IMG/VR virus record: IMGVR_UViG_3300027996_002186
Location: 372,001 to 436,000 of that record
Reading direction: 5' to 3' (one strand)
Length of the DNA stretch: 64,000 nucleotides
Shown: piece by piece, positions 2,437-36,599 of the stretch
Layout: each line of letters begins with the position of its first letter
How positions within the stretch are numbered: position 1 is the first letter of the stretch
The notes under the pieces: generated by a model
The model's input: the letters and a program-made list of their open reading frames with translations, nothing else
Database searches by the model: none
Told to the model about the DNA's origin: nothing
Translations under genes and position numbers: made by a program

Positions 2437-2465
2437 GTAAATTATAACAATTTTAATAAAAAAGT

Positions 2466-4091: not shown

Positions 4092-4173
4092 AACATTATA
4101 TATTAATATCATGAAATCAGAATCATGTTATCTCACTCATTATTCAAAATGTATATTTCGAATATGTAATAAT

Positions 4174-5199: not shown

Positions 5200-5233
5200 A
5201 TAGAATATATATTAAATATACTTAATTGTTTGA

Positions 5234-7078: not shown

Positions 7079-7166
7079 TTTTAATTTACTTGAATTTAGT
7101 TTATATATAGTAAAATAAAAACTTTGTTTTGGAAGTTTAGTAATTCGAATGATGTATTTTTAGAAA

Positions 7167-7580: not shown

Positions 7581-7590
7581 TCAACATACT

Positions 7591-8256
7591 TTAGATATTC
7601 ATCAATGGAATTTTAGGCTTGATTTCAAATCTTTCATTTAAATACATTTTCAATTCATTCTCGATATAATGTTCTGGAACCTCCATAGATGGATCCATAT
7701 GTTCCATTCTATCTGATAATTCTATTGAGAACTCGTGGAGTACAGTAGGTTTTATAGCTTGTACTAATCTATCAGAAACAACAAAAGCTCTAGTAAATCT
7801 ATCCTTTGGTGATATTTCACCTTCTGCCAATTTCATTGAACTCTTTATAACCTTTTTCAAAAAGGAATTGTAATTGTTACCTGGATCTTCTAAGATTGGT
7901 TTCATAATTTTATTAAATGCTCTAGTTGATCCGAATAAAAACCCTGCGATTGCTATTATTGGGAAGAAAGGAGCTAAAGCCATGGGTGTAATTCTATGCA
8001 CCATTTTAATAACACCAACTTTCATAGCTGATCTTTTCTTGGCTACTTGAGCATCTTTGAATAATGCATTCAACATACCAAATGTGAAAGATGTTCCATT
8101 CTCATTTAAATACTGACCAAGATTACCTCTATGAGCGTGATATAAATGTGTTTTTATATCTTTCTTAGTAACACCTAACCTTTTTAATTCGGCCTTAATG
8201 TTCTTATCATATTTTTCTTGAATTAAAAATTCATCATATTTCTTAATACTCTTCAT
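7591..8256 (-). CDS. Hypothetical protein with hydrophobic segment, CTS-like N-terminus
   Basis: Track start 8400 overlaps the gp52-like gene; the likely start is ATG 8256 (MKSIKKYDEFLIQE). Hydrophobic stretch ALAPFFPIIAIAGFLFG. Confidence 0.7.
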   Translation of the reverse strand: MKSIKKYDEFLIQEKYDKNIKAELKRLGVTKKDIKTHLYHAHRGNLGQYLNENGTSFTFGMLNALFKDAQVAKKRSAMKVGVIKMVHRITPMALAPFFPIIAIAGFLFGSTRAFNKIMKPILEDPGNNYNSFLKKVIKSSMKLAEGEISPKDRFTRAFVVSDRLVQAIKPTVLHEFSIELSDRMEHMDPSMEVPEHYIENELKMYLNERFEIKPKIPLMNI

Positions 8257-8293
8257 ACAAAAACAAAATATACTTTTTACTATATATAAAACT

Positions 8294-23235: not shown

Positions 23236-24063
23236 ATGGAATGGATTAAAAGATTTGAAGAATTAAACTCAAATACATATAGATCAGCTGGAGATCATCT
23301 TATAAATATCAATAAGATATCAAGAGGTCAAAAACTAATTGATTATGCTGATGAAAAAGATTTCGGATTCTATAATGTTTGGTGGGGAAACACAAATAGT
23401 GCCATTAGTAAAAAACCTTTAGTGTTTACTAATCCAAAGTCTGATTTTATTTACAACGTTTTTAAGATAACTCGAGGAGGACCGAAAGCTAATGACATTA
23501 AACATAAACTTTCCAATAAGGGTCCAGAAGAATTAGTTAAAGATTGGTATGATGGAGTTTCTTCTTTATCATTCACCATAAATTTCACATTCAAAACCGC
23601 AGGTGAATCTTTAAAAGTACATGATAGATTAAAAAGATGGAAAGTTCCATTATTTTCTATAAACTTTCAAATAGCTGAGTGGGTAGAAAAAGAAGATTTT
23701 GAAGGTGTAGATGACGATCCGATAGTAAAAAATGCTCTTGATTTATATCAACACATGGATGGTTATCATTATCCACAGATTTCTATACAAAGACCTTTAG
23801 ATGATCACTACTTTGGTATATTTAGTGATAGAAAATCAGCCAATAAATTTAAAAGAGATGTACTTGGTCCTGCTATAGAAGAACATCATGATAAAATATT
23901 TGAGATATTCTCTATCATAGGAGCTTCTGCAAAAGATTTTGAAAAAGCAATTAAAGCATTTAAAAATATCAGAACCAACTATCTATATGATGAATCAATA
24001 GGAAGATCAAACCCAGAGCAATTATGGTATAATAATTATGGTTGGGATAATGAGATGCATTGA
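23236..24063 (+). CDS. Tandem paralog 1 of 4, CTS-like N-terminus
   Basis: MEWIKRFEELNSNTYRSAG; FSDRKSANKF; IRTNYLY. Confidence 0.8.
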   Translation: MEWIKRFEELNSNTYRSAGDHLININKISRGQKLIDYADEKDFGFYNVWWGNTNSAISKKPLVFTNPKSDFIYNVFKITRGGPKANDIKHKLSNKGPEELVKDWYDGVSSLSFTINFTFKTAGESLKVHDRLKRWKVPLFSINFQIAEWVEKEDFEGVDDDPIVKNALDLYQHMDGYHYPQISIQRPLDDHYFGIFSDRKSANKFKRDVLGPAIEEHHDKIFEIFSIIGASAKDFEKAIKAFKNIRTNYLYDESIGRSNPEQLWYNNYGWDNEMH

Positions 24064-24090
24064 TATGGTAATAAATAAAGATATAAAGAT

Positions 24091-24834
24091 ATGAAATACT
24101 TAAAACGATTTAACGAAGAGTTAAAACCTCAAACATATAGAAGAGCGGCTCATAAACTTGATAAAATGGGTCATACTGGTAGAGCTAAGGAATTAAAGGA
24201 TTGGTCTTATAAAATAGAAGATGATGTCAATATCACTAAATGGAAAAATAACTTAGAAGAATATAGTAAATTTGGAACATATAAATTGAATATTAAAACA
24301 GAGAAAGGTGACATAAGTGGTGATTTTTTCTTAGATATTATTTTTGATGGTGATAGTTTTGTGGATTCATTATATGACAATGAAGAAACCTCTAATAAAT
24401 CTGGTGGTATATGGTTCTTTGTTGGTATTATTCCAACAACAGAAGAACTTTTAAAAGAATGTAAAGATAAATTTCCGGATAATGATATGGGTAATGGTTT
24501 TTTCTGGGGATTGTCTGTTGGTTTAGATTATGAAATAGAAGATGATAAAGTTAATTTCAAGAAATTTGAAATTCATAATTATGACAAACACATATCAGGT
24601 GATATTTCTTTAGGTGATAGAGGAACCGCAAATAGATTTAGAAATATCTTAAAGAAGATGTTTACTGATCCATCATTCAATTATCCAAGTGGTAGAAATG
24701 ATGTTGAATATGTGTATCAAGCATTTGAACAAGTTATTTTAAGCGAAGCTGGATTCTCATCAGATTATGGATTTAAATTAGAAGATGTTGCTGAGTTTAT
24801 AAATACTATATCAATAAATACACTATATAAATAA
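24091..24834 (+). CDS. Tandem paralog 2 of 4
   Basis: MKYLKRFNEELKPQTYRRAAHKLDKMGH; DRGTANRF; ISINTLY. Confidence 0.8.
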   Translation: MKYLKRFNEELKPQTYRRAAHKLDKMGHTGRAKELKDWSYKIEDDVNITKWKNNLEEYSKFGTYKLNIKTEKGDISGDFFLDIIFDGDSFVDSLYDNEETSNKSGGIWFFVGIIPTTEELLKECKDKFPDNDMGNGFFWGLSVGLDYEIEDDKVNFKKFEIHNYDKHISGDISLGDRGTANRFRNILKKMFTDPSFNYPSGRNDVEYVYQAFEQVILSEAGFSSDYGFKLEDVAEFINTISINTLYK

Positions 24835-25736
24835 TGAAATACTTAAAACGATTTAACGAAGAATTAAACTCTTATACTTATACTAAAGCGGCGAATGCTC
24901 TTAAAAAAATGGGTCATAATAGAAGATCTAGTGTTTTAACAAAATGGGGAGAAGAAACCAAGAAAAGAGAAAAAATAAAAGCTGCGAATGAATTAAGAGC
25001 TAAGCTTGAAAAGACACCACCATTTAGTATGAAAATTTTCAGAGATAAGTGGAATAGTGCCACGAAAAGTAGAGATTTCTCACAAGGTCCTTATCTTGAA
25101 GGTAATTTTTACTTAGGAGCTTATTTTGAAGAAGACTGGGCTTATGATGGTGAATATTTTATGGAATATGAACAGGATAATAAATCAACGATGCAATTTT
25201 CATTTGGTTTATCACTTTTTCCAGCTGATGAAGAAACACAATTAAAGTTTGATAAAGAAGAATGGGAAAATGAATGGAATAATCAAATCTGGCCAGTTAT
25301 TTTCACAATTAGATTAAATAATGATAAAACTACTTTAGATCAAGAAAAATCAGCATTCTTTTGGGAAGAAAGAGAGGATGGTAATTTTTTATTTTCAAGT
25401 AGGTCTGAAGCTATGAAATTCAAAAGATACTTAATATACTCATTGAGTGGTGTTGATAATGATTTTAGTAAAGCATTTAGTGGTGTTAAATCAATAATTA
25501 GTGATATGATTAAACGTTATAATGATAAAGATGGTTATTACTTGACTAGGGTTCCAAAAAACGTTGTTGGGAACGGTATTGTTTTCGATAGAGATGATTA
25601 TGAAATAATAAAAAAAGGTAATTTTGAATATTATTGGCCATTTGGTGATAAAGAATGTAATCTAAAGGAAAGTGATTATAATTATTTTGAGAAAGCGATT
25701 AAACGTATGGGTCTAAATAATTTATATAGAGATTAA
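24834..25736 (+). CDS. Tandem paralog 3 of 4
   Basis: MKYLKRFNEELNSYTYTKAANALKKMGH; FSSRSEAMKF; MGLNNLYRD. Confidence 0.8.
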   Translation: MKYLKRFNEELNSYTYTKAANALKKMGHNRRSSVLTKWGEETKKREKIKAANELRAKLEKTPPFSMKIFRDKWNSATKSRDFSQGPYLEGNFYLGAYFEEDWAYDGEYFMEYEQDNKSTMQFSFGLSLFPADEETQLKFDKEEWENEWNNQIWPVIFTIRLNNDKTTLDQEKSAFFWEEREDGNFLFSSRSEAMKFKRYLIYSLSGVDNDFSKAFSGVKSIISDMIKRYNDKDGYYLTRVPKNVVGNGIVFDRDDYEIIKKGNFEYYWPFGDKECNLKESDYNYFEKAIKRMGLNNLYRD

Positions 25737-26524
25737 TGAGATATTTAAGAAAATATAATGAAGAGTTAGATGGTAAGACTTACTTAGATGCCGCTCGTAA
25801 GCTAGGTAAACTAGGTCATAAAAATAGAGTATCTAAATTAAAAGACTGGGCCAAAAAAAGTGCATACAATTCTCTTAGGAAAGGAATTGAAAGTTTAGGA
25901 ACCTTTGAGTTAACTATTGATAGCAATTATGGCTCAACATATACTGGTGAGTTTTATATAGATTTACAATTCGATGAGGATCAATTCAATGATAGATATT
26001 ACAACTGGATTTGTGGTGATGTTATTGATCTTTGGCTTTATTTTAATATTAGTATTTTACCAGTAGATGATTCTTTCAAAAAACATGATTCTGCTAGTTC
26101 TGGAGAGATTAATGAAAAACTTAATGGATCCTATGGAATAGGTGAGATATCAATACATTTGGGTAATATTCCTGAGGATTTGGATGTGCATGATATGGAA
26201 AAAGTTTATCAAATATACCAAAAGGATAAGTACTCATCTAAAATACCACATGTGGTTAACCCCTTAGGTAAGGTTTCTATGGATTATTTTGATGTTCCTT
26301 TCTACTTTACTGATAGAAAATCAGCATCTAGGTTTAGAAAGGGTTTAATAGATATATTTAAGGGTAATATCGTTTATAAAGAAACTAGTAAACAACCTGG
26401 CGGATTAAAGGAAGAAATTATTGACTTTCTAATATCAGATAATAACTATCTTGATTTTGATGAATTCCAAATTTGGCTAGAAAGGTTAGGAAGAATAAAT
26501 ATTAATAGATTATATAAAGATTAA
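25736..26524 (+). CDS. Tandem paralog 4 of 4
   Basis: MRYLRKYNEELDGKTYLDAARKLGKLGH; FTDRKSASRF; ININRLYKD. Confidence 0.8.
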   Translation: MRYLRKYNEELDGKTYLDAARKLGKLGHKNRVSKLKDWAKKSAYNSLRKGIESLGTFELTIDSNYGSTYTGEFYIDLQFDEDQFNDRYYNWICGDVIDLWLYFNISILPVDDSFKKHDSASSGEINEKLNGSYGIGEISIHLGNIPEDLDVHDMEKVYQIYQKDKYSSKIPHVVNPLGKVSMDYFDVPFYFTDRKSASRFRKGLIDIFKGNIVYKETSKQPGGLKEEIIDFLISDNNYLDFDEFQIWLERLGRININRLYKD

Positions 26525-26539
26525 AACTTATATTTACAA

Positions 26540-27742
26540 ATGATAATCAAAAAATACAAAAAATTTTTAGAATCAACTAAAACAGAACAAGATATGTGGA
26601 ACATAATTCCAGATTCAGTTAAAGATTTGCATAAACTTTTCCAATCAAGTGGTAAGAAATTATACCTTGTTGGAGGATCAGTTCGTGATTTTTTAACAAA
26701 TGACACCCCAAAAGATTTTGATTTAGCAACTGATGCACTTCCGGATGAAGTGTTAGAGATTGTTAAAGGTAAATACAGAACTAACTTACAAGGTAAGGCA
26801 TTTGGTGTTGTAGTTGTTTATACAGATGAAATTCCAGAAGGAATGGAAGTGGCTACATTCAGAGAAGATATAAGTAAAGGTAGAAATCCTGAGGTTAAAC
26901 TTGGTGTTACTATTGAAGATGATGTTAAGCGTAGAGATATAACTTACAACGCTCTTTTCTATGACTTAGATAAGAAAGAAATTATAGATTTAACTGGCGG
27001 TAAGGCAGATTTAGAATCTGGTATCACTAGAATGGTTGGTGAGCCAATAGAGAGGTTTGATGAAGATTCGCTTCGTATTCTTCGAGCATTTAGATTTGCA
27101 TCTAGATATGAACATCCATTACACAAAGATACAGAACGTGCAATAGAGAAGAGAAAACAACTTGAGAACATCGATCCTGAGACAGGAGACATGAAAAGAA
27201 TATCACAAGAAAGAGTTTGGGAAGAAATGACTAAAGCTTGGAAGCAAGCTAAAGATTACAGATACTACTTAAACTTCTTTACTAAGTTTGATATGTGGGA
27301 TCAAGTATTTCCTGGAGCTAACATCAACACAGAGTTGGTTGATAGTAAAAACTTTGCTGTTGTTATATCTAACCTATTTAAGAACGAATCTACTAGTGGT
27401 TTGGCTACTAAATTGATACAAGAGTATAAAATGGATTCTTGTTCAGATGTTACTGGTGTAGATAACTTAGTATCTAAGATAATATTCTTAATTGACTTCT
27501 TAAAATTCGATACTGATAAGGTATTTGAAACTTTCAAAAAGAAACAACAATGCGCTATTGATGATACAACCATTTTAGAGTGGTTAGATGTTAATAACAT
27601 AACAGATGATTATTTTATCAAGTTTGTTGAATACAAACCATCTGTCTCTGCAAAAGATTTGATGTTACAAGGGTTCAAGGGATCTAACTTGGGTAAGGAA
27701 ATCAAGAGATTGGAGATTGAAAAATTCAAGAATATTCTATAA
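26540..27742 (+). CDS. cca: Class II tRNA nucleotidyltransferase (CCA-adding enzyme family)
   Basis: LVGGSVRD, DFDLAT, EVATFR, RRDITYNA, EDSLRILRAFRF, ERVWEE. Confidence 0.93.
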   Translation: MIIKKYKKFLESTKTEQDMWNIIPDSVKDLHKLFQSSGKKLYLVGGSVRDFLTNDTPKDFDLATDALPDEVLEIVKGKYRTNLQGKAFGVVVVYTDEIPEGMEVATFREDISKGRNPEVKLGVTIEDDVKRRDITYNALFYDLDKKEIIDLTGGKADLESGITRMVGEPIERFDEDSLRILRAFRFASRYEHPLHKDTERAIEKRKQLENIDPETGDMKRISQERVWEEMTKAWKQAKDYRYYLNFFTKFDMWDQVFPGANINTELVDSKNFAVVISNLFKNESTSGLATKLIQEYKMDSCSDVTGVDNLVSKIIFLIDFLKFDTDKVFETFKKKQQCAIDDTTILEWLDVNNITDDYFIKFVEYKPSVSAKDLMLQGFKGSNLGKEIKRLEIEKFKNIL

Positions 27743-27788
27743 TTTCAAATTAATATTTTTTTAATAATTTTTTACAATATATACTCAT

Positions 27789-28526
27789 ATGATAAACTTC
27801 GTTACATATGTAAAAGATGTCGTTGGTAATAACTACCTGGCTATCAAATTCGATAAAGGAACAATAGAAACATACTTAAACCAATTAAAAGAAATTATTG
27901 GTTCTGATTTCGAAAACTTTACAGAGAACCAACAAAAAAGAGATGGTGGATCACATCACATGACCGTTATTAACGTAATGGATTATAATAAACTTTCTAA
28001 AGAAGTTGGTATGGATAAGTTTGTATCATCACTTGACTCAGTTTTCAACTATGAGATAGATGATTTGAAATTCATGGGTATTGGTACCGCTGAACGAAAT
28101 ACAAACAGAGCTTATTTTATTGTTTGTAAAAGTGATAAATTAGATGCTATTAGAACTAGATATGGGTTAAAAGATCACGACTTTCATATAACTTTAGGAT
28201 TTAAACACAAAGATGTTTTTGGTGTTAGAAAAAATGAGATAGTAAAAAAAGAGGGTAAGTTTCTGAAACTTTTGAAGCAGGAATTTTATAAGAGTGATAA
28301 TTGGAATTTTATAAGAAAGATTGAAAACTACCAACTCGACCCAAAATCAGAGATTATTCCTGTGTCTATAAGTGATTCACACTTGAAAGTAAAATGTTCT
28401 GGGTATTATATAGATATAACTTATATGGATGATGGTGAGAAATTTTGGATAGTTACAAAATATCCAATCGAAGAGGAATTACCTCGTATGTCAGAGACAG
28501 AAATTGCTAAAAAATTGAATAAATAA
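27789..28526 (+). CDS. 2H phosphoesterase (two HxT motifs)
   Basis: HHMTVI and DFHITLGF. Confidence 0.8.
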   Translation: MINFVTYVKDVVGNNYLAIKFDKGTIETYLNQLKEIIGSDFENFTENQQKRDGGSHHMTVINVMDYNKLSKEVGMDKFVSSLDSVFNYEIDDLKFMGIGTAERNTNRAYFIVCKSDKLDAIRTRYGLKDHDFHITLGFKHKDVFGVRKNEIVKKEGKFLKLLKQEFYKSDNWNFIRKIENYQLDPKSEIIPVSISDSHLKVKCSGYYIDITYMDDGEKFWIVTKYPIEEELPRMSETEIAKKLNK

Positions 28527-28527
28527 T

Positions 28528-28776
28528 ATGGAGTTACTTTACAGCTTAGATGAGTGCATAGATAGAGAAAGAGTAGTAGGTAGGTTAGAACTACTTAAAT
28601 TAGCAGGAAAATTATATTATGATATAGAATATGATATACTAGAAATAGAAGATTTAGATTTATCTGATGATGAGTTAGATAAGTTATTAAAGCTTCTAGA
28701 TAAAAACGATGTTATTGAATACACTGAAAGAGAGAATGATATTGATAAAGATGATTTTCTTAATGAAGATTATTAA
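28528..28776 (+). CDS. Small acidic hypothetical protein
   Basis: 82-aa ORF, D/E-rich. Confidence 0.65.
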   Translation: MELLYSLDECIDRERVVGRLELLKLAGKLYYDIEYDILEIEDLDLSDDELDKLLKLLDKNDVIEYTERENDIDKDDFLNEDY

Positions 28777-28836
28777 ACATCAACAAGTCTGATATTGGTG
28801 ATCAAATATCGAGTTGAATAAACTAATATATAGTAT

Positions 28837-29205
28837 ATGAAAAAGTTCACCGACATAACAGATAAAGATTCTTCAATGGAATTCAATAAAGATAAGGAGT
28901 CAGATTTATCAAATGATATAACAGAATTGAATGACCAAGTATCGGATGAAGTTAAGAATACTATTCTTGATGGTGAGTGGGAGATTTGTAATGTGATTGA
29001 TGTATCAGCTAACAAACCAACAAACGAAGCTATTATAATCAATGCTGAGTTGGGTGATAAACAAGTTAAAAGAGGAGAGTTTCTTTATGTAACAGCACTT
29101 ATAAATAAAAAAGGTCGACCATATCACCAGAGTCAAATGGGTGTTTTAAAGGTTAGAGTAGTGGAGATATATAACACACTATTAGTCCTAAATTCATTAA
29201 GATAA
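28837..29205 (+). CDS. Hypothetical late protein
   Basis: TAATATATA 4 nt upstream of ATG. Confidence 0.7.
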   Translation: MKKFTDITDKDSSMEFNKDKESDLSNDITELNDQVSDEVKNTILDGEWEICNVIDVSANKPTNEAIIINAELGDKQVKRGEFLYVTALINKKGRPYHQSQMGVLKVRVVEIYNTLLVLNSLR

Positions 29206-29276
29206 CATGAAATGTGTTAAAATACACATAAAATATTAACAACTAAATCAATATTTATATCTAAACACCACATCAC

Positions 29277-30248
29277 ATGAAAAATCTATTAATAACCATA
29301 TTACTATCAATAACAAATACTATACCAGCTATGTGCACACTGGTTGTAGATAATGGTAATTGGAGTAGTGCTTCATCTTGGGATTGTGGGTATATACCTG
29401 CATCGGATGGGGATACTATGGTTATCCCTTCTTCTATGACTGTTGTAGTTGATTTAAACAGCCCTACCTATGTTGATATGAGGATTGAAGTTTATGGAAC
29501 AATGCAGTTCAGTAATGGAAAGAAAATCAACATGGATAGTGATGGTATTGTTGAAATTTATACTGGAGGAACATTAACCGGTGGTAATTCTGGTTCTAGA
29601 TTAACGATAGGTGGAACTACTTGGTGGAGTGGAACAGATCCTCCCTTAATAGGCCCAACCATTGTTAGTAATAGCGGGTTTTTACCAATTGAATTAGTAG
29701 AATTTAATGCTATTGTAAATGAAGATAGAGTAGAAATATCATGGACAACTGCATCCGAAATAAACAATGACTATTTTATTGTTGAGAAAAGTAAAGATAC
29801 ATTTATATGGAGTAAGGTAATTGAAGCCAAGGGAGCAGGTAATAGTAATATCATAATCAATTATTTTGAAATTGATAACAACCCACTAATGGGGCTATTT
29901 TACTATCGCCTCACTCAAGTCGATTTTGATGGTAAGCAAGAGACATTTAATATTATTCCTGTTGAAAACGCTATAAAAGGTGAGGGTATTATGAACATCT
30001 ACCCCAACCCAGTAAATAAAGGAGAATGTATTAGTCTTTCATTTGAAAGTTTACATCGAGATAAGCAGGGAATTCTAGTTGTTCTTAGAGACATAAGAGG
30101 TAATGAAGCATATTCTATAATAAAATTTGTTGATTGTAAAGATGGGTTGGTTGTTATTGATATTCCTCATCACCTTACATCAGGCACATATTTAGTAGTT
30201 GCTACTTCTGAAAATTTATTATACAGTAAAAAAATAATCATAAAATAA
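29277..30248 (+). CDS. Secreted protein with type IX secretion (type A) C-terminal sorting domain
   Basis: Signal peptide; GNWSSASSW G8-like beta region; LPIELVEFNA..WTTASEINNDYF..YYRLTQVDFDG; CTD IYPNPV..GTYLVV..KKIIIK. Confidence 0.88.
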   Translation: MKNLLITILLSITNTIPAMCTLVVDNGNWSSASSWDCGYIPASDGDTMVIPSSMTVVVDLNSPTYVDMRIEVYGTMQFSNGKKINMDSDGIVEIYTGGTLTGGNSGSRLTIGGTTWWSGTDPPLIGPTIVSNSGFLPIELVEFNAIVNEDRVEISWTTASEINNDYFIVEKSKDTFIWSKVIEAKGAGNSNIIINYFEIDNNPLMGLFYYRLTQVDFDGKQETFNIIPVENAIKGEGIMNIYPNPVNKGECISLSFESLHRDKQGILVVLRDIRGNEAYSIIKFVDCKDGLVVIDIPHHLTSGTYLVVATSENLLYSKKIIIK

Positions 30249-30628
30249 TGATAATCAAGGGCGATCAAAGTACTCCATACGTAAAGTTAGATAAAGAAAA
30301 CTGTACACTTACTATTATAGGTAAATCTTACCCAGAACACCCATCATTATTTTATGATCCGATAGTGGAAGAGATTGATAAATGTAAAAGTGATTTGGGA
30401 AAATCTAAAATCACAATCAGAATAGCATTAGAAATATTAAATTCAGTTTCAACTAAATACCTTTTCCATTTGGTAAAAGAGTTATATGAATCAGCTATGG
30501 AGACGGAGGTTAATTGGTATTATGAAGAAGATGATGAAAGTATGTTAGAAGAAGGTAATTATTTAAAATCATCCCTCCCTAAATCAAATTTTAATTTAAT
30601 AGGTGTGTTGGATCTTAGATCAATCTAA
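30248..30628 (+). CDS. SiaC family (DUF1987) regulatory phosphoprotein
   Basis: STPYV, GKSYPE..FYDPI, NSVSTK, VNWYYEEDDESMLEEG. Confidence 0.85.
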   Translation: MIIKGDQSTPYVKLDKENCTLTIIGKSYPEHPSLFYDPIVEEIDKCKSDLGKSKITIRIALEILNSVSTKYLFHLVKELYESAMETEVNWYYEEDDESMLEEGNYLKSSLPKSNFNLIGVLDLRSI

Positions 30629-30710
30629 TAGTCTTGTAATATTCTAACCATTCTTCACTTTGACCAGAAATGAACTCCGGTGTTAAACAAGTTGGTATTT
30701 TTAATCATTT

Positions 30711-31085
30711 TTATCTCTTCTTGTCTAACAGAAGTCGAACAGATCGAAGAATATCTGTGTGATCAAATGGTTTAAATATGTAATCAGCGGCTCCTAAATT
30801 CATTCCTTTTTGAAGGTCCAAAGTATCTACTTTTGCTGTTACAAATAGGAAAGGAGGAATTACTTCCGTTGTCCAAATCAATTGTAACTCCCAGAGTAAT
30901 TCAAACCCGTCTAATTCAGGCATAGCAACGTCACAAATAACCAAGTCTGGACAATCTTTCATAATTGCATCATAACCTAATCTACCATTAGTAGCAGTTG
31001 AAACTTTGTATCCTGATAATTCAAATATTTCTTGTAATGTTTCTCGGATGTTTATATCATCTTCAACAATTAGTATGTGATCCAT
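30711..31085 (-). CDS. Single-domain response regulator receiver
   Basis: ILIVEDD, ICDVAMPELDG, VTAK, YIFKPF. Confidence 0.93.
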   Translation of the reverse strand: MDHILIVEDDINIRETLQEIFELSGYKVSTATNGRLGYDAIMKDCPDLVICDVAMPELDGFELLWELQLIWTTEVIPPFLFVTAKVDTLDLQKGMNLGAADYIFKPFDHTDILRSVRLLLDKKR

Positions 31086-31217
31086 AGTTACATCTTTCTT
31101 TTCTTCCTCTTCATATCACCCTCTATTATATGAGTCTCATACATATCTATATATTAATTTGGTAGTTTAATAAATAATGTGTATATTGTATTATTAATCA
31201 CTATAAAAGAAATAACT

Positions 31218-31508
31218 ATGGAATTTAAAATTGACGGAATAACACTCTATACTTGTGATAAGTATGGTAATAAAGGAAGAAAGATTGCTGATAATACATC
31301 ATTTGCATCATTTGATGAGTCTAGAAATATATTTATTGTTACTGATTTAGATGGTATCGTACAAACAAGAGATGGATATGGAAATCCTATTCGAAAAATC
31401 TGCGAAAATGCTATTGAGGCTAGATTTGTTGATAAAGATATCATTGTTCGTACTAGAAATGGAAATGAGCAACGTGATGAATACGGGAATTTAATTAGAA
31501 AAATATAA
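31218..31508 (+). CDS. Small protein with three DxYGNxxRKI repeats
   Basis: DKYGNKGRKI / DGYGNPIRKI / DEYGNLIRKI; start moved to ATG 31218. Confidence 0.7.
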   Translation: MEFKIDGITLYTCDKYGNKGRKIADNTSFASFDESRNIFIVTDLDGIVQTRDGYGNPIRKICENAIEARFVDKDIIVRTRNGNEQRDEYGNLIRKI

Positions 31509-31617
31509 CCATTTAATTAGGTGTGTTATAATATTATGATTATATTTGTAATAACAATATGAGGGATATATCATTTGTCAAAATCAGAATAAAAAAGTTA
31601 AAATAACTTAAAAAAGG

Positions 31618-31649
31618 TTTGGTAGAAGAGATAAAGTTCCGTATATTTG
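31618..31649 (+). promoter_or_regulatory. Bacteroidota -33/-7 promoter
   Basis: TTTG-N20-TATATTTG. Confidence 0.8.
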
Positions 31650-31699
31650 TAAGACAAGAAACAATATTATTAATCACTACATAAAAAAAAACAAAAACT

Positions 31700-32317
31700 A
31701 TGTCATTATTTACAAAAGCAAAGAAATCACCAGCTAAAACTACTAAAGCAAAAGCTGAAAAAGTAAGAATTACTATCGAGGATACAACATTCTTCGATAA
31801 AGTTACAAAACTAGAGGCACTTCAATCAACTATGAAATCATCTAAGGCGAAAGCAGATATGATTTCTGATGAACTAAAAGACCTTGGAAAAGAAAAATGG
31901 GCTGAACTTTACACCGAAACGGGTAAAAACCCAGGATCTGTGATGTTAGAACAAATTAATGATTCTGACGATGTTGCACAAGTAATGTTCCTTCCTACTG
32001 ATAAGTATATCACTATCAATGAGGAAAGATCTGAAGAGTTACGTGAGACTTACGGAGAAGAAATTGTTAACGAAGATACTACTTTCTCTTTCGATTCAAA
32101 AATGATTGAGAAGTATGGAGAAGTTCTTTCTCAGTTGATTATGGATTCTGTGGAAATTGCAGATAAAGACAAAGAAAAAATCATCAAAGCAACTACTAAA
32201 TTCTCTGTGGCTAAGGGAACCATCGATAACTTCAAAACTTACGGAGAAATTGGTGAAGTAATGGAGTCAGTTAGACCAGTAATCGCTTTGAAAAACGTAG
32301 AAGTAATTAAAGGATAA
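31700..32317 (+). CDS. Hypothetical early protein, probably highly expressed
   Basis: Perfect host-type promoter, own terminator, codon bias (aac/ttc/atc). Confidence 0.8.
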   Translation: MSLFTKAKKSPAKTTKAKAEKVRITIEDTTFFDKVTKLEALQSTMKSSKAKADMISDELKDLGKEKWAELYTETGKNPGSVMLEQINDSDDVAQVMFLPTDKYITINEERSEELRETYGEEIVNEDTTFSFDSKMIEKYGEVLSQLIMDSVEIADKDKEKIIKATTKFSVAKGTIDNFKTYGEIGEVMESVRPVIALKNVEVIKG

Positions 32318-32321
32318 AACT

Positions 32322-32353
32322 AAGAGAGTGTTATAATATATAACACTCTCTTT
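32322..32353 (+). terminator. Intrinsic terminator-like hairpin
   Basis: aagagagtgttata-ata-tataacactctctt, 14-bp stem after stop at 32317. Confidence 0.75.
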
Positions 32354-32367
32354 AAAAATAAAATAAA

Positions 32368-32544
32368 ATGAATTTATTTAAAAATACACATATATTGAAA
32401 CAATTTGCTAAATCGTATCCAAATGATGAGGATTTAGGTAATATAGTTAGGAAATCTTTTCCTATTGATGAATTTGTTAAGAGTATTCCTAATGACCGAA
32501 CTTTGGGAACAGAAATTAGAAAAAAATTAATTCAAATTAATTAG
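32368..32544 (+). CDS. 58-aa protein with duplicated PNDxxLGxxxRK motif, not in ORF track
   Basis: MNLFKNTHILKQFAKSYPNDEDLGNIVRKSFPIDEFVKSIPNDRTLGTEIRKKLIQIN*. Confidence 0.75.
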   Translation: MNLFKNTHILKQFAKSYPNDEDLGNIVRKSFPIDEFVKSIPNDRTLGTEIRKKLIQIN

Positions 32545-32602
32545 GTAGTATAAATTAATAATTAGTATATTCGTAAAAGTTAAAATTAAAAATAATAAAA
32601 AT

Positions 32603-33739
32603 ATGTCGAAAATTTCAAAATCAAAACAAGTAAGTCCAGAATTACAAGAGAAATTATCTCTTTTAACTCCTAAAGAAAGAAAATACTTCTCTGTTATGTG
32701 GGCCAAGTATGGTGTTCTTAACATCATTTCTAAACCAGGAGTTGCGAAGTCTGCGATTGGTCGTTCAATCTGTGATAAATTAGGTTTCCGATATATGGAT
32801 ATCAGATTATCAATGGTTGATGAAACTGATGTAGGACTTTATCCAGATGTCTCAGAGATTGAGGTTGATGGTAAAAAAGTTAAATGTTTGGACTTCGTTG
32901 TTCCTAGATGGGCAATTGAATCTAACAAACAACCAACGATTATTCACTTTGAAGAGTTGAACAGAGCTTCTCAACAAGTTCGAAACGCGGCTCTACAAAT
33001 CTTACTTGAGCGTCAGATTGGAACAGAGTTTGAATTTAATGATAATGTCCTTATGATGTCTTCTGGTAACCTTGGAGACGAAGATGGGACAGATGTTGAA
33101 GAGTTCGATGCGGCACTTAACAACCGTTTAGTTCATATCAACCACGTACTTGGTGTTGACGAGTGGATTGAAAATTTCGCTGAAGAGAATGTTCACCGTT
33201 TAATTACGTCATTCATCAAAGCACACCCTGAGCAAATGTATAAAACTAGTGATAACGCTAAAGCATACGCTACTCCCCGTTCTTGGACGATGTTGTCTGA
33301 GTTCATCATTACCAACTTTGGTGAAGATGCTTCTCCTAAAGATTTCCTTCCATTAGTGAAAGAAGTCGCAACTGGTTACCTTGGTAACTCGTCTATGAAG
33401 TTCGTACAGTACTGTGAGGATATGTTAAATATCTCTATTGAAGATGTTCTTAACAACTATGATGGTATTAAGAAAGACTTGGCTAAATACAACCGTGATA
33501 AAAACTCCGAATTAATTCAATCATTAAAAGAGATCGAAATCACTAAATTAACTAATAAACAACTTAAAAACATTGTTAAGTTTCTTGAGAATGTTGGTGA
33601 TGATGAAAAAACGGCTTACTTACTTTACATCTTGGATAACGTAGCTGATGTTACAAATCCAAAATTAAAGAACTTCCTTTTAGAGTTCGAGGAATTGTTG
33701 AGAACTATTAAGAAAATCAACAAACCGGGTAGTAAATAA
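32603..33739 (+). CDS. MoxR-like AAA+ ATPase (partner type of DUF2201/VWA proteins)
   Basis: Walker A variant SKPGVAKS, DIRLS, Walker B variant IHFEELNRA, SGN, ALNNR, ATPRSW. Confidence 0.88.
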   Translation: MSKISKSKQVSPELQEKLSLLTPKERKYFSVMWAKYGVLNIISKPGVAKSAIGRSICDKLGFRYMDIRLSMVDETDVGLYPDVSEIEVDGKKVKCLDFVVPRWAIESNKQPTIIHFEELNRASQQVRNAALQILLERQIGTEFEFNDNVLMMSSGNLGDEDGTDVEEFDAALNNRLVHINHVLGVDEWIENFAEENVHRLITSFIKAHPEQMYKTSDNAKAYATPRSWTMLSEFIITNFGEDASPKDFLPLVKEVATGYLGNSSMKFVQYCEDMLNISIEDVLNNYDGIKKDLAKYNRDKNSELIQSLKEIEITKLTNKQLKNIVKFLENVGDDEKTAYLLYILDNVADVTNPKLKNFLLEFEELLRTIKKINKPGSK

Positions 33740-33761
33740 TCTTAGTAATAAGATTCACAAC

Positions 33762-33794
33762 AGGGGGGTATCGGTTGGATATCCCCTTTTTTTT
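33762..33794 (+). terminator. Intrinsic terminator
   Basis: gggggtatc-ggttg-gatatcccc followed by T8. Confidence 0.85.
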
Positions 33795-33829
33795 GCTCAA
33801 ACAAATAAAAATAAAATGATATATAATAT

Positions 33830-34063
33830 ATGAATGATGATAAAGTCGAGATACAAATAGTTTTAAAGAATCACTTTGGTGAATTTCTTGGTAAGAAATC
33901 AGTTCTTAGTGAAGATCAGTACAAAAATCTATTACAGATGTCTAAGAGTTTTTATAATGGATCAGGGTTTGAATTAACGTGTGAGGATGGATCATTTGTT
34001 GTTTTCCCACCAGAGATAGTTCGGCAGTCTATATTACTAGTAAAAAAAATAAAGAATGTTTAA
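33830..34063 (+). CDS. Small hypothetical protein
   Basis: 77-aa ORF, overlaps next start. Confidence 0.7.
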   Translation: MNDDKVEIQIVLKNHFGEFLGKKSVLSEDQYKNLLQMSKSFYNGSGFELTCEDGSFVVFPPEIVRQSILLVKKIKNV

Positions 34064-34706
34064 AAATAGATTCAAGAGATTTGGTGGTGATTATATACCT
34101 GATATAATAGAATATCTTAGAGAGATCGTTAAAAACGATCCTACATCAACTATAACAGTTGGTTGTGACTCAATACAAAAGCGTAGAAAGACAGTCTATG
34201 CAAATACTATAATGATTTACAATTCGGATATTAAAAGGGGAGCACACGTTGTTTTCTTTAGAGAGGAATGTAGTAAGATTAGGGATAATCAAGAAAGGTT
34301 ATATAAAGAAGCTCAATGGTTACATGATATTGGAACTTATCTTGATAAGGAATTATCTGATTTTTATATTAGAAAAGATTTAACCGATAATGAGATAAAG
34401 AGATATAAGTATCACTTATTAAAATGTGTTGGTGAGTATTCTAATGTTGAAACACATCATGAAGATGGAGTTATGACTAACCTTGTTATAACCCCACTTG
34501 ATAGATTACAACCTAGATTAGTTGACTTACACGTTGACTTCAATCCATTTGAGGGTAATATGAATGAAAAGGGAGTTCGTAAGAATAAATCATATGCTGC
34601 TTATAAGGCTTACGTTCCTTGGTTGAGAGGTATGGGTTTTAGAACTTGGAGTAAACCGCAAGCATTCGCTGCAACTTCAGCAGCAGATTTATTATTAAAA
34701 GATTGA
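34056..34706 (+). CDS. RNase H-like YkuK (DUF458) family protein
   Basis: ITVGCDS, GAHV, ERLYKEA, LHVDFN, KPQAFAATSAAD. Confidence 0.8.
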   Translation: MFKNRFKRFGGDYIPDIIEYLREIVKNDPTSTITVGCDSIQKRRKTVYANTIMIYNSDIKRGAHVVFFREECSKIRDNQERLYKEAQWLHDIGTYLDKELSDFYIRKDLTDNEIKRYKYHLLKCVGEYSNVETHHEDGVMTNLVITPLDRLQPRLVDLHVDFNPFEGNMNEKGVRKNKSYAAYKAYVPWLRGMGFRTWSKPQAFAATSAADLLLKD

Positions 34707-35086
34707 TGTTTGAGATAAATAAATACCTTTTAAGAAAGATGGGATGGGTTGACTATTGCCGATCAACGGGAATCGGACTGTACATAACTTGTATTAATAA
34801 CAATAAGATATTGAATTTATTTGAGGATGATGATTTGATAAAGTTTTTTATTGATATAAAGGATAGAAAATTTTGCTATTTAATAAAAGAACTTTCGGAT
34901 TTCGAAAAACAAAAATCAAAAAATACATATAAATTTATAATAACTGATTATATAGATCAATTACCCGTTATTGATTATGTTGAGTTTAACTCAAATGAGA
35001 GTCTATTTAAGATGATAATTATTAACGAAGCTTGTAACGATGAATATGAAAGACATTTTAAAATAAATAAACTATTAAATAGATGA
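34706..35086 (+). CDS. Hypothetical protein with RxxKI tag
   Basis: Ends ERHFKINKLLNR. Confidence 0.7.
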   Translation: MFEINKYLLRKMGWVDYCRSTGIGLYITCINNNKILNLFEDDDLIKFFIDIKDRKFCYLIKELSDFEKQKSKNTYKFIITDYIDQLPVIDYVEFNSNESLFKMIIINEACNDEYERHFKINKLLNR

Positions 35087-35694
35087 AGAGAAGAGAATTA
35101 AAAATATTAGGATTATCATATAGTCAGAGCCAAGTTGGATCTTATGTTTTGGTACTTTCTGATAAAAATGGTAGTCGAAAATTACCATTGATAATTAAAC
35201 CACTAGAAGCTCAGAGAATAGCTCTTGAGTTAGAGGGTATTAAATCACCTAGACCATTAACACATGATTTGATAAAATCAATGAGTGATTCATATGGTAT
35301 TGATATACAAGAGGTTTATATACATTCTTTATTAGAGGGTGTTTTTTATACTAAACTTGTTACATCAAATGGTATAGAGGAATTTGAGATTGAATGTACT
35401 GCTGGTGATGCTATGGCTTTATCCGTAATTTACAAGTGTCCTATTTTTGTAACAACTGATATATTAGAATCTGCGGGTATAGTTATATCAAGTGAGGATG
35501 AAGAAGGCAGTATTTATGAATTTGGGGATGATGAAATTGACTCAGAACTTAATGATATTTTTGAACCGAAGCCAGAGAGAATTGTATCTATTGAGGACCT
35601 TGAAATAATGATGAATAGCGCTATTGATAATGAAGAGTATGAGATAGCAGCAGAGATTCGAGATAGGATCAATGAATTAAAAGAGGGTGAGTAA
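35083..35694 (+). CDS. Bifunctional nuclease (DUF151) with C-terminal UVR domain, Bacteroidota-type
   Basis: LSYSQSQVGSYVLVL, LPLII..EAQRIA, RPLTHDL, EGVFY, EEYEIAAEIRD. Confidence 0.9.
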   Translation: MKRRELKILGLSYSQSQVGSYVLVLSDKNGSRKLPLIIKPLEAQRIALELEGIKSPRPLTHDLIKSMSDSYGIDIQEVYIHSLLEGVFYTKLVTSNGIEEFEIECTAGDAMALSVIYKCPIFVTTDILESAGIVISSEDEEGSIYEFGDDEIDSELNDIFEPKPERIVSIEDLEIMMNSAIDNEEYEIAAEIRDRINELKEGE

Positions 35695-35723
35695 TTCAAC
35701 ATTATAAAAATAAATAAAAAGTT

Positions 35724-36599
35724 ATGGCATTAAGTTATATTGGCGGAAAGAGTCGCATTGGTACATGGATAAGGAATTACATTCCAAATGACGTAGAGAC
35801 TTACGTAGAACCCTTTTCGGGTATGTTTTGGGTATTCTTTAAGTTAGATGTTCCACAATTCAAAAATTTAAAGAGAGTTGTTTATAATGACTTTAATCCA
35901 TTAAATGTTAACCTATTTAATTGTATTGTAAACTATGATGATTTTTATGATGTGATTAAAGATTATAAATCACAGGATAAGGAATTATTCAATAGATGTC
36001 AGAGTGAAATATTTCATCCCGATTTCCAAGTTGATTTATCTGAACCTGATTATCATACAGCTGCAAAATATGCGTATGTTCTTAGTCAAGTTTGGTCTGG
36101 TACTAATCCAGAGAAAGGTAAGTTTATTGACTTAAAGGGTAAATATAAATCTAAGTTTGATTCATTCAAAGGTAAGTTAACCAATGATAAGTGGAAAGGT
36201 TATTTTGATAAGATTACTGTTTGTGAGAATATGGACTTCCAAGATGTTATTGAGAAGTATGATTCACCATCAACATATTTTTATTGTGACCCACCTTACT
36301 ATAAAACAGAAAAGTATTATGCTAATCATGATTTCGGTTTAGATACACATGAAAGATTAGCTGATTCATTAAAAGCAACAACTGGTAAATTCTCATTGAG
36401 TTACTACCACTTTGATCAATTAGAAGAATGGTTCGTGAGAGGTGATTATAGATGGGAGCAGAAAGACTTTCATAAAGCTTCTATGGCAAAGTCTGGTAAG
36501 GCACAAACAAAGGGAACAGAAATTCTGATAATGAATTATGGTATACCTAAAGATGATTTGGAATCCTCAGAAGAGGAAGAAGAAACATTTGAGATATAA
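35724..36599 (+). CDS. dam: Dam-like (D12 class) DNA adenine methyltransferase
   Basis: YIGGKS, YVEPFSG, YNDFN, YCDPPY, EILIMNY. Confidence 0.9.
   Translation: MALSYIGGKSRIGTWIRNYIPNDVETYVEPFSGMFWVFFKLDVPQFKNLKRVVYNDFNPLNVNLFNCIVNYDDFYDVIKDYKSQDKELFNRCQSEIFHPDFQVDLSEPDYHTAAKYAYVLSQVWSGTNPEKGKFIDLKGKYKSKFDSFKGKLTNDKWKGYFDKITVCENMDFQDVIEKYDSPSTYFYCDPPYYKTEKYYANHDFGLDTHERLADSLKATTGKFSLSYYHFDQLEEWFVRGDYRWEQKDFHKASMAKSGKAQTKGTEILIMNYGIPKDDLESSEEEEETFEI

What the first reader, a model, noticed from the sequence alone, without database searches (positions are those of the whole stretch)
29277..30248. Phage-encoded cargo for the host type IX secretion system
Seen: Sec signal peptide, beta-rich domain, LPIEL Ig-like domain and a canonical type A CTD (IYPNP..GxY..KKIIIK). 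Established: this CTD routes proteins through the Bacteroidota T9SS to the cell surface. Inference: a lytic phage puts its own protein on the surface of the infected cell, possibly for superinfection exclusion, receptor masking, adhesion or jamming T9SS-dependent gliding.
Basis: partly seen in the sequence, partly recalled or inferred. Interest (0 to 1): 0.65.

Follow-up and report, generated by a model that had tools for sequence, protein, structure and literature searches.

The report
Huge-phage gene for T9SS-secreted protein
A very large phage of Flavobacteria-like bacteria carries a well-conserved gene, taken from its host lineage, whose product has all the sequence and fold marks of a protein exported by the host's type IX secretion system; similar phage genes have been predicted twice before, so this is a good new example, not a new principle.

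Summary
ORF 29277-30248 (+, 323 aa) has four parts: a signal-peptide-like N-terminus, a small G8 beta-helix, an FN3-like 'LPIEL' domain and a C-terminal T9SS type A sorting domain. The sorting domain scores above the TIGR04183 cut-off, and its predicted fold matches solved T9SS CTDs (Z 12.4 and 10.9).

The window is phage DNA. The identical 12 kb lies on a 483 kb IMG/VR contig with a terminase, and the flanks are 75-80% identical to the 635 kb huge phage LR745206.

The gene is not contamination. Variants sit on at least eight phage-like contigs in several gene neighbourhoods. All five copies with checked phage context fall in one 20-row tree clade, whose nearest context-checked neighbour is a Flavobacteriales-type bacterial gene (57% identity). 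All domains are under purifying selection (CTD dN/dS 0.01-0.23). N-terminal passenger domains and CTDs have been swapped between copies.

One new detail: in 6 of 8 phage contexts the gene is followed at once by an orphan SiaC-family gene. This was never seen in 83 bacterial loci.

Export by Sec plus T9SS is well supported by inference. Surface display, the benefit to the phage and a lytic lifestyle are untested. Phage-encoded T9SS cargo has been predicted before (Bellas 2020; de Jonge 2019), so this is a new member of a known kind.

The parts
29277..30248 (+). Whole gene: signal peptide, G8 beta-helix, FN3-like domain and T9SS type A CTD; 323 aa plus stop
   Evidence: ORF. Domains. There are 4209 homologues, 33 of them full length at 68-99% identity in metagenomes.
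29277..29330 (+). Sec-type signal peptide, aa 1-18; likely cleavage after Ala18, with Cys20 conserved
   Evidence: Hydrophobicity and sequence; helix 2-12 in the model; Ala and Cys conserved in the alignment consensus; 108 of 120 homologues look like signal peptides. Heuristic only, no SignalP.
29331..29681 (+). G8 domain, aa 19-135: short right-handed beta-helix; the variable passenger module
   Evidence: PF10162 at 36.9 bits, above the gathering score. Domain model pLDDT 97. PDB matches are weak and only to beta-helices (MinC C-terminal domain, autotransporters, adhesins; Z 5.6 or less). Invariant residues are Gly, Trp and Pro, with no invariant Asp, Glu or His. dN/dS is 0.08-0.18 among phage G8 copies.
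29682..29981 (+). FN3/Ig-like 'LPIEL' spacer domain, aa 136-235
   Evidence: Z 10.5-10.7 to FN3 domains. It is the most widely shared module: at least 140 IMG/VR contigs and 592 Bacteroidota genome loci carry it.
29982..30245 (+). T9SS type A C-terminal sorting domain, aa 236-323
   Evidence: TIGR04183 above its cut-off. Fold matches to solved CTDs 8qb1 and 8glk_D. Profile hit to 8glk_D. dN/dS is 0.01-0.23 among phage copies. 98% identical to the CTD of a phage protein with a different N-terminus.
30248..30628 (+). SiaC-family (DUF1987) gene; its start overlaps the cargo gene's stop (ATGA); second gene of the cassette
   Evidence: PF09345 at 100 bits. Related to P. aeruginosa SiaC 6kko at E 2.8e-6. 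It directly follows the CTD gene in 6 of 8 phage contexts and in 0 of 83 bacterial loci.
30711..31085 (-). Stand-alone response-regulator receiver, convergent with the cassette; inside the same variable island but not found next to the cassette in the other phage contigs examined
   Evidence: PF00072 at 90 bits. It is a generic CheY-like receiver. tblastn finds it only in copies of this same phage.
29214..31526 (.). Variable island relative to huge phage LR745206: the flanks are conserved at 75-80% nucleotide identity, and the interior is replaced there by about 1.4 kb of unrelated ORFs
   Evidence: blastn of window 24000-36000 against L001. The replacing ORFs have no Pfam hits.

Best explanation
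The gene is a real phage-borne cargo gene for the host's type IX secretion system. An ancestor of this huge-phage lineage (genome at least 483 kb) took it from a Flavobacteriales-type host, and the lineage has kept it under purifying selection.

Likely mechanism during infection (inferred, not shown):
1. The pre-protein crosses the inner membrane by Sec, and the signal peptide is cut after Ala18.
2. The folded G8 beta-helix, FN3 domain and CTD are recognised through the CTD by the host T9SS translocon and carried across the outer membrane.
3. The CTD is removed. The small passenger is then either anchored on the cell surface or released.

The passenger has no conserved acidic or histidine residues. 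It therefore most likely acts as a binding or adhesin-like surface module rather than an enzyme, changing the surface properties of the infected cell (adhesion, aggregation, or access to phage receptors).

The gene travels as a mobile cassette, usually translationally coupled to an orphan SiaC-family partner-switch protein. The phage has no kinase or phosphatase for this protein, but the candidate host lineages hold several DUF6272-SiaC pairs. This suggests that the cassette couples a surface change with interference in a host signalling switch.
For: Shown by tools:
- Domain architecture and CTD identity.
- Phage origin of the DNA: an identical 12 kb on a 483 kb viral contig with a terminase; baseplate, topoisomerase II and HNH genes in the window; 75-80% nucleotide synteny with LR745206.
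- No compositional anomaly: gene GC3 is 0.223 against 0.203 +/- 0.036 for the phage's ORFs.
- Copies on independent phage-like contigs in different neighbourhoods: L005, L016 and its 90 kb contig, L099, L100, L101, L103, L111.
- Bacterial homologues only in Bacteroidota. The best is 57% identical, on a 242 kb bacterial contig. Others lie next to GldB/GldC or UvrC.
- All five phage-context sequences fall in one clade of 20 rows (SH-aLRT 99). Its nearest neighbours are the bacterial P0036 and P0035 (context not checked).
- dN/dS is well below 1 in G8, FN3 and CTD among phage copies.
- Domain mosaicism: CTD identity to other copies is 98%, 59% or 24% while G8 identity is 31%, 77% or 74%.
- Other T9SS CTD ORFs in this phage and in LR745206 and LR756500.
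- SiaC linkage. The phage has no PP2C or DUF6272. Five candidate-host-type genomes have 1-9 SiaC genes each, and in 5 of 6 loci examined a DUF6272 gene comes directly before SiaC.

From the literature:
- T9SS and gliding mutants of Flavobacterium resist phages, so T9SS-dependent surface components matter for adsorption (bioRxiv 10.1101/2020.10.02.323337; PMC9804748).
Against: - No experiment or expression data.
- The Pfam CTD model scores below its gathering score (23.2 against 27).
- The signal peptide was judged by heuristics only.
- The host is unknown, so the presence of a T9SS in it is inferred from taxonomy.
- G8 function is unknown, and PDB fold matches are weak (Z 5.6 or less).
- Two close phage copies (L101, L103) lack the SiaC neighbour, so the pairing is not obligate.
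- Some relatives (P0037, P0043-P0045) end without a CTD.
- dS values often exceed 1, so dN/dS is only qualitative.
- The tree is a quick search, and 15 of the 20 clade members have no checked context.
Confidence: 0.72

Rival explanations
1. Same export route, different destination: the protein is released into the medium by T9SS before lysis and acts away from the cell. For example, it could bind polysaccharide or particles, or coat neighbouring cells, rather than being displayed on the infected cell.
For: The architecture is the same as in the best explanation. Type A CTD cargo is known to be either anchored or released (my own knowledge). The passenger is small and has no anchor motif of its own. 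Bellas et al. proposed secreted enzymes for Cryophage cargo (PMC7468147).
Against: There is no enzymatic signature and no invariant catalytic-type residues in the G8 domain. A 215-residue binding module would be diluted if released. Sequence alone cannot separate anchoring from release.
Confidence: 0.2
2. It is a virion decoration or fibre-associated protein. On this reading the FN3 and CTD beta-sandwiches are just Ig-like domains of the kind common on phage particles, and the hydrophobic N-terminus is not a working signal peptide.
For: The FN3-like 'LPIEL' domain occurs in at least 140 IMG/VR contigs, mostly without a detectable CTD (65 of 80 loci were FN3 only). Ig-like domains on phage particles are well known (cited in PMC6949934).
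Against: The N-terminal signal-like segment and the extreme C-terminal CTD motifs are both conserved under purifying selection. The protein is homologous over its full length to bacterial T9SS cargo. The gene lies among nucleotide and tRNA-repair and regulatory genes, not in a structural module. PHROGs gives no hit.
Confidence: 0.05
3. It is host DNA: an assembly chimera or a mis-binned bacterial segment, or a recently captured and decaying passenger gene with no role for the phage.
For: The cassette lies in an island absent from LR745206. Read-level checks could not be run.
Against: The identical 12 kb lies on a second, longer viral contig. Variants at 51-91% identity sit on many independent phage-like contigs from ENA, JGI and Logan. 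GC3 matches the phage. The nearest bacterial gene is only 57% identical. dN/dS is far below 1. The ORF is intact.
Confidence: 0.03

Closest known systems
T9SS type A cargo genes of 'Cryophage' (Bellas et al. 2020, Nat Commun, PMC7468147)
   Same: Phage-encoded proteins with T9SS type A sorting domains that lie in variable genome islands. The authors proposed that they hijack the host T9SS and might serve in superinfection exclusion or competition. That work is also in silico only.
   Different: The Cryophage cargo are enzymes or PA14 proteins (an endoglucanase, a GH39 and a PA14 protein). Here the passenger is a small non-enzymatic G8 beta-helix plus FN3. It sits in a Mahaphage-like huge phage, forms a phage-specific clade with swapped modules, and is usually coupled to an orphan SiaC gene.
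T9SS sorting-domain ORFs near BACON ORFs in gut crAss-BACON phage contigs (de Jonge et al. 2019, Viruses, PMC6949934)
   Same: T9SS sorting domains annotated on Bacteroidetes phage contigs, in one case fused to a carbohydrate-binding (BACON) repeat protein.
   Different: Those ORFs lie next to head or structural modules in gut phages and were not analysed further. Here the context is non-structural, the passenger is G8, and selection and phylogeny were examined.
Bacterial G8-FN3-CTD proteins of Flavobacteriales ('T9SS type A sorting domain-containing protein', e.g. P0036, P0060, P0073, P0084)
   Same: The same four-part architecture and length (about 320-350 aa), at 37-57% identity over the full length. 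They are often next to another cargo gene that shares the FN3 and CTD modules.
   Different: They are chromosomal, lie among housekeeping or gliding genes, and are never followed by SiaC in the loci examined. Their function is also unknown.
Solved T9SS CTDs: mirolase CTD (8qb1) and NucA CTD in the F. johnsoniae T9SS complex (8glk)
   Same: The same beta-sandwich fold (Z 12.4 and 10.9, rmsd 1.6-2.1 A over whole domains) at about 20% identity, in the same terminal position.
   Different: Those are bacterial proteins with proven T9SS dependence. The phage CTD is untested.
Phage 'moron' surface proteins that block superinfection (e.g. T5 Llp, phi80/N15 Cor; my own knowledge)
   Same: A phage-encoded, host-exported envelope protein carried in a variable island that changes the infected cell's surface.
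   Different: Those are lipoproteins that use Sec and Lol in Enterobacteria and have known receptor targets. Here the route is T9SS, and both target and effect are unknown.
SiaABCD partner-switch system of Pseudomonas aeruginosa (SiaC structures 6kko, 6k4f)
   Same: The downstream gene belongs to the SiaC/DUF1987 family (PF09345, 100 bits). A Ser aligns with the phospho-Thr position by my own count, which is tentative.
   Different: The phage has no SiaA phosphatase, no SiaB/DUF6272 and no cyclase. The match is below the NCBIfam SiaC equivalog cut-off (50.5 against 150). This SiaC gene is coupled to a secreted cargo gene instead.

Membership tests
T9SS type A CTD cargo (TIGR04183 / PF18962) | Match to the curated type A sorting-domain model at the extreme C-terminus, above the curated cut-off | tested here: met
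   TIGR04183 scores 25.0 bits against a cut-off of 23, aa 241-323, model positions 1-72 of 72. The six-frame search gives 27.1 bits, E 9.7e-7. No type B model was listed at E up to 1.
T9SS type A CTD cargo (TIGR04183 / PF18962) | Pfam Por_Secre_tail match above the gathering score | tested here: inconclusive
   23.2 bits against a gathering score of 27, E 8.7e-5, covering the full model 1-75 of 75. The database's precomputed Pfam lists PF18962 for the 99%-identical P0001 and most homologues.
T9SS type A CTD cargo (TIGR04183 / PF18962) | Conserved CTD motifs (YPNP-type, GxY, basic and hydrophobic C-terminal strand) | tested here: met
   P243, P245, G303 and Y305 are invariant in 65 sequences. 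The terminal K-K-I-I-I-K type ending is conserved.
T9SS type A CTD cargo (TIGR04183 / PF18962) | CTD beta-sandwich fold like solved CTDs | tested here: met
   8qb1 at Z 12.4, rmsd 1.6 A over 79 residues. 8glk_D at Z 10.9, rmsd 2.1 A over 75 of 75 residues. Also PorU, PorZ and FspA CTDs. Model pLDDT in this region is 66-89.
T9SS type A CTD cargo (TIGR04183 / PF18962) | N-terminal Sec signal peptide | tested here: met
   Heuristic only: Lys2, a hydrophobic core, and Ala at position -1 conserved. No SignalP-type predictor was available.
T9SS type A CTD cargo (TIGR04183 / PF18962) | Producer cell has a T9SS | tested here: inconclusive
   The host is not identified. All 80 best bacterial loci are Bacteroidota, mostly Flavobacteriales. 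One homologue lies beside gldB and gldC. Related huge phages of over 634 kb are predicted to infect Bacteroidetes (PMC7162821).
T9SS type A CTD cargo (TIGR04183 / PF18962) | T9SS-dependent export and CTD removal | not testable with these tools
   Needs expression in wild type and in T9SS mutants.
G8 domain (PF10162) | Profile match above the gathering score; beta-rich fold | tested here: met
   36.9 bits against 22.9, aa 35-110. The beta-helix model has pLDDT 97. There is also a weak hit to amnionless, which the Pfam, sequence and fold searches all return only weakly.
Tailed huge phage (Mahaphage-like) | Phage hallmark genes and kinship to known huge phages | tested here: met
   Baseplate wedge phrog_219 and topoisomerase II in the window. 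Terminase_6N at 74 bits on the 483 kb contig that holds the identical region. 77.7% nucleotide identity over 54% of a 6 kb stretch to LR745206. CheckV completeness 91% and 98%.
SiaABCD-type partner switch (for the neighbouring gene) | SiaC-family fold and profile | tested here: met
   PF09345 at 100.3 bits against 24.5. PDB 6kko at E 2.8e-6.
SiaABCD-type partner switch (for the neighbouring gene) | Cognate kinase (SiaB/DUF6272), PP2C phosphatase (SiaA) and output enzyme encoded alongside | tested here: not met
   No SpoIIE/PP2C and no DUF6272 above cut-off in the 312 kb or the 483 kb record. The NCBIfam SiaC equivalog scores 50.5 against 150. So this is a SiaC-family member, not a SiaABCD system.

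The most novel reading that the evidence does not exclude
The cargo gene and the orphan SiaC gene form a dedicated, mobile huge-phage module that reprograms host surface behaviour. The T9SS displays a phage-chosen binding module, with interchangeable N-terminal domains and host-matched CTDs. The cytoplasmic SiaC decoy plugs into the host's multi-copy DUF6272-SiaC partner-switch network. Together they switch the infected cell's adhesion, aggregation or motility state, or close the T9SS-dependent receptor route to competing phages.
Probability: 0.15. Interest if true: 0.75.

Novelty: new member of a known kind. Interest (0 to 1): 0.5.

Why it matters
T9SS-exported surface proteins drive gliding, adhesion and polymer degradation in Bacteroidota, and in Flavobacterium they are tied to phage adsorption. 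A family of phage genes that feeds its own cargo into this system, kept under purifying selection and shuffled module by module, points to a way for huge phages to edit the surface of the infected cell.

This particular gene is small and well defined, and it has clear bacterial counterparts. That makes it a convenient test case:
- Fuse a reporter to the CTD.
- Compare wild type with T9SS mutants.
- Ask whether display alters adsorption or aggregation.

The recurrent coupling to an orphan SiaC gene is, as far as the searched literature goes, undescribed. It gives a second handle on what the cassette does.

Tried and rejected
So there was no read-level check of the junctions, no expression data, and read laying was not used.
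- Promoter and terminator scans of 28500-31800 gave no more sites than shuffled sequence.
- PHROGs has no family for the protein.
- The whole-model Foldseek search gave only generic tandem FN3/Ig hits. A domain-wise search was needed.
- G8 domain fold searches gave only weak beta-helix matches: Foldseek E at least 1.4, VIA Z 5.6 or less. I assign no function from them.
- The ESM Atlas feature search of the G8 part gave only sub-threshold hypothetical clusters.
- A single-protein scan of IMG/VR found only the phage's own longer contig. The alignment-based scan was needed to see relatives.
- I tested whether the neighbouring receiver might resemble the T9SS regulator PorX. It is a generic CheY/OmpR-type receiver, and PorX is not among the best PDB hits.
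- A lipoprotein reading of the N-terminus was rejected. The residue before the conserved Cys is Met, Ile or Leu, not Gly, Ala or Ser.
- The large representative-protein search was not used, because family scans and the word search already settled the identity.
I corrected it by using handles.
Full report
WHAT IS THERE

ORF 29277..30248 on the + strand encodes 323 aa. Family scans give Pfam G8 (PF10162) at aa 35-110, 36.9 bits against a gathering score of 22.9. At the very C-terminus (aa 241-323) the T9SS type A sorting domain matches two models. NCBIfam TIGR04183 scores 25.0 bits against a cut-off of 23. Pfam PF18962 scores 23.2 bits against 27, so it falls below that threshold, although E is 8.7e-5 and the whole model is covered. 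The six-frame search of the whole record gives 27.1 bits, E 9.7e-7, and none of 14 control genomes scores above the cut-off.

An AlphaFold2 model built on 65 homologues (pLDDT 85) shows four parts:
- an N-terminal helix at aa 2-12;
- a run of short strands at aa 19-135;
- a beta-sandwich at aa 136-235;
- a second beta-sandwich at aa 237-323.

A search against one representative per PDB cluster puts two solved T9SS CTDs on top for aa 237-323. These are mirolase 8qb1 (Z 12.4, rmsd 1.6 A over 79 residues) and the NucA CTD bound in the Flavobacterium johnsoniae T9SS complex 8glk_D (Z 10.9, rmsd 2.1 A, 75 of 75 residues). PorU, PorZ and FspA CTDs follow. The middle domain matches FN3 domains at Z about 10.7. 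A sequence profile of the family also finds 8glk_D (E 2.3e-5) and 8qb1 (E 0.012).

The G8 part, folded alone (pLDDT 97), is a compact right-handed beta-helix. Its PDB matches are weak and generic: the MinC C-terminal domain, autotransporter passengers and adhesins, Z 5.6 or less. Its invariant residues are Gly, Trp and Pro, with no invariant Asp, Glu or His. I read it as a binding or structural module, not an enzyme.

The N-terminus has Lys2, a hydrophobic core and a conserved Ala two residues before a conserved Cys. 108 of 120 homologues share this pattern. The residue directly before the Cys is Met, Ile or Leu, so a lipobox is unlikely. No dedicated signal-peptide predictor was available, so this point rests on heuristics.

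IS IT PHAGE DNA?

The window is part of a 312,709 bp IMG/VR virus record. The same gene, together with 12 kb around it at 100% identity, lies on a 483,262 bp IMG/VR contig with 98% CheckV completeness. That contig carries a large terminase; the 312 kb record does not, so it is a fragment.

Within the window there are a baseplate wedge gene, split topoisomerase II genes and HNH endonucleases. The nearest GenBank phages are the huge phages LR745206, LR756502 and LR756504. Al-Shayeb et al. state that the genomes above 634 kb all fall in the Mahaphage clade and are predicted to replicate in Bacteroidetes (PMC7162821).

No tyrosine integrase was found in either record.

IS THE GENE A CONTAMINANT?

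No.
- Its GC3 (0.223) lies within the phage's ORF distribution (0.203 +/- 0.036).
- Full-length variants at 68-99% identity occur in many metagenome assemblies.
- Those I inspected sit on phage-like contigs in several different neighbourhoods:
  - a 268 kb contig (L005) and L099, which share ECF sigma and similar small-ORF neighbours; L099 also carries ClpP;
  - a 90 kb contig with ribonucleotide reductase, PhoH and a 5252-aa protein;
  - L100, with Mom;
  - L101, with DHFR and PrsW;
  - the IMG/VR contigs L103 (125 kb) and L111.
- The closest gene with bacterial context (P0036, 57% identity) lies on a 242 kb contig between shikimate kinase and PBP1/DnaK genes, next to another cargo gene.
- More distant homologues (about 40%) are annotated as T9SS type A sorting-domain proteins of Flavobacteriales and Vicingaceae, one of them beside gldB and gldC.
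- A scan of one genome per species returned 592 relatives. The best 80 are all Bacteroidota, mostly Flavobacteriales families.

In a quick maximum-likelihood tree, all five sequences with checked phage context fall in one clade of 20 rows (SH-aLRT 99). Its nearest neighbours are the bacterial P0036 and P0035 (context not checked), and the clade is nested among Flavobacteriales sequences. This fits one capture from a Flavobacteriales-type host followed by spread within the phage lineage. Two caveats apply: it was a quick search, and 15 clade members have no checked context.

SELECTION AND MODULARITY

Nei-Gojobori estimates among phage copies give dN/dS of 0.08-0.18 for G8, 0.09-0.18 for FN3 and 0.01-0.23 for the CTD. 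For example, the window against L005 gives CTD dN 0.010 and dS 0.68. dS is often above 1, so these values are qualitative, but all three domains are clearly constrained in phages.

Identity by domain is mosaic:

| Copy | N-terminal domain vs window | CTD vs window |
|---|---|---|
| L005 (512 aa) | different N-terminus, 31% | 98% |
| P0031 | G8, 77% | 59% |
| P0042 | G8, 74% | 24% (a different type A CTD) |

So passengers and sorting domains are exchanged as modules. A few relatives end without a CTD (P0037, P0043-P0045).

THE ISLAND AND THE SiaC PARTNER

Against LR745206 the flanks are conserved at 75-80% nucleotide identity. Window 29214-31526 is replaced there by about 1.4 kb of unrelated ORFs. 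The island holds four genes:
- the cargo gene;
- an overlapping (ATGA) SiaC-family gene at 30248-30628 (PF09345, 100 bits);
- a convergent stand-alone receiver at 30711-31085;
- a 109-aa ORF.

The SiaC gene directly follows the CTD-bearing gene in 6 of 8 distinct phage contexts: the window, L005/L006, L016, L099, L100 and L111. Two of these cargo genes have different N-terminal passengers. It does not follow in any of 83 bacterial loci examined. A very divergent bacterial SiaC could have been missed by tblastn at E 1e-5.

The phage has one SiaC gene and no PP2C phosphatase or DUF6272 protein. Five Flavobacteriales genomes of the candidate host type carry 1-9 SiaC genes each, and in 5 of 6 loci examined a DUF6272 gene comes directly before SiaC. 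In the phage cassette the cargo gene thus occupies the place that DUF6272 holds in bacteria. I found no paper linking DUF1987 to phages.

HOW COMMON IS THIS IN PHAGES?

- The same phage has a second FN3 plus CTD ORF at the start of the 483 kb contig (PF18962 at 32.7 bits, above the gathering score).
- It also has a 133-aa ORF with a signal peptide and a CTD-like domain, scoring 22.8 bits.
- LR745206 has a 199-aa ORF with a signal peptide and a CTD at 42 bits, and LR756500 has one at 37 bits.
- With my own HMMs, 14 of the 80 best IMG/VR loci show an FN3-CTD architecture, including contigs of 344-362 kb.

Two papers have noted the phenomenon. Bellas et al. [quoted passage not shown] De Jonge et al. 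2019 saw T9SS sorting-domain ORFs on gut phage contigs (PMC6949934). Both are in silico.

MECHANISM AND VERDICT

Shown:
- the architecture, fold, phage location, origin in Bacteroidota and purifying selection;
- the modular exchange and the SiaC linkage.

Inferred from established T9SS biology:
- Sec export;
- CTD-dependent passage through the host translocon;
- CTD removal, followed by anchoring or release.

Speculative:
- The benefit to the phage. T9SS and gliding mutants of Flavobacterium become phage resistant (bioRxiv 10.1101/2020.10.02.323337; PMC9804748). A phage-driven change of the T9SS-dependent surface could therefore plausibly affect superinfection, but adhesion or aggregation control is equally possible.

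This is a new, well-documented member of a known but little-studied kind. The SiaC coupling is the one feature that seems undescribed.

Noticed in passing
window 30248-30628 (+); bacterial loci L182-L187: The phage has an orphan SiaC-family gene with no kinase or phosphatase. Candidate-host-type Flavobacteriales genomes carry 1-9 SiaC paralogues each, and in 5 of 6 loci examined a DUF6272 gene comes directly before SiaC. By my own tentative count, a Ser in the phage protein aligns with the phospho-Thr of P. aeruginosa SiaC.
   Followed up: partly
window 30711-31085 (-): Stand-alone CheY-like receiver domain (PF00072, 90 bits), convergent with the cassette. It is found only in this phage among the loci fetched, and it is not PorX-like.
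   Followed up: partly
window 26540-28526 (+): A CCA-adding/poly(A) polymerase-family nucleotidyltransferase (400 aa) is followed by a 2H-SAK phosphoesterase (245 aa). This is a likely tRNA/RNA repair pair, and it is conserved in LR745206.
   Followed up: no
window 567-9637: Topoisomerase II subunit genes (5234-7078 on the - strand, 8294-9637 on the + strand) lie near large HNH/homing-endonuclease ORFs (567-2066, and also 20820-22304). This points to mobile endonucleases around replication genes.
   Followed up: no
L013 (483 kb contig, bases 2-700) and L003 1480-1881 (-) = G000:C1 about 191.4 kb, outside the window: Two further candidate T9SS cargo genes in the same phage. One is a 5'-cut ORF with a Gly-rich linker, an LPIEL FN3 domain and a CTD (PF18962 at 32.7 bits) that resembles the swapped CTD of P0042. 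The other is a 133-aa ORF with a signal peptide and a CTD-like domain (22.8 bits), next to a GluRS-like gene.
   Followed up: partly
L005 5541-6095 and L099 3902-4447: In two related phage contigs an ECF-type sigma factor gene lies two genes upstream of the cargo-SiaC cassette. The window has no such gene at that place.
   Followed up: no
window 29211-29228: A perfect 6-bp inverted repeat with a 6-nt loop (ATGTGT-TAAAAT-ACACAT) lies just after the stop of the upstream ORF and 49 nt before the cargo start codon. It could be a regulatory or terminator-like hairpin.
   Followed up: no
proteins P0037, P0043, P0044, P0045: Relatives at 58-71% identity, 271-280 aa long, keep the signal peptide and G8 but end without the CTD. 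They are either CTD-less variants or broken or mis-called genes on short contigs.
   Followed up: no
G000 versus G001: The window's 312 kb record is rated 91% complete but lacks the terminase. An identical region lies on a 483 kb contig rated 98% complete. The 312 kb record is evidently a fragment, and the completeness estimate is unreliable for this lineage.
   Followed up: partly
window 32603-33739 (+): A 378-aa ORF with only weak AAA/MoxR-like ATPase matches (E about 0.01), conserved at 77% nucleotide identity in LR745206.
   Followed up: no
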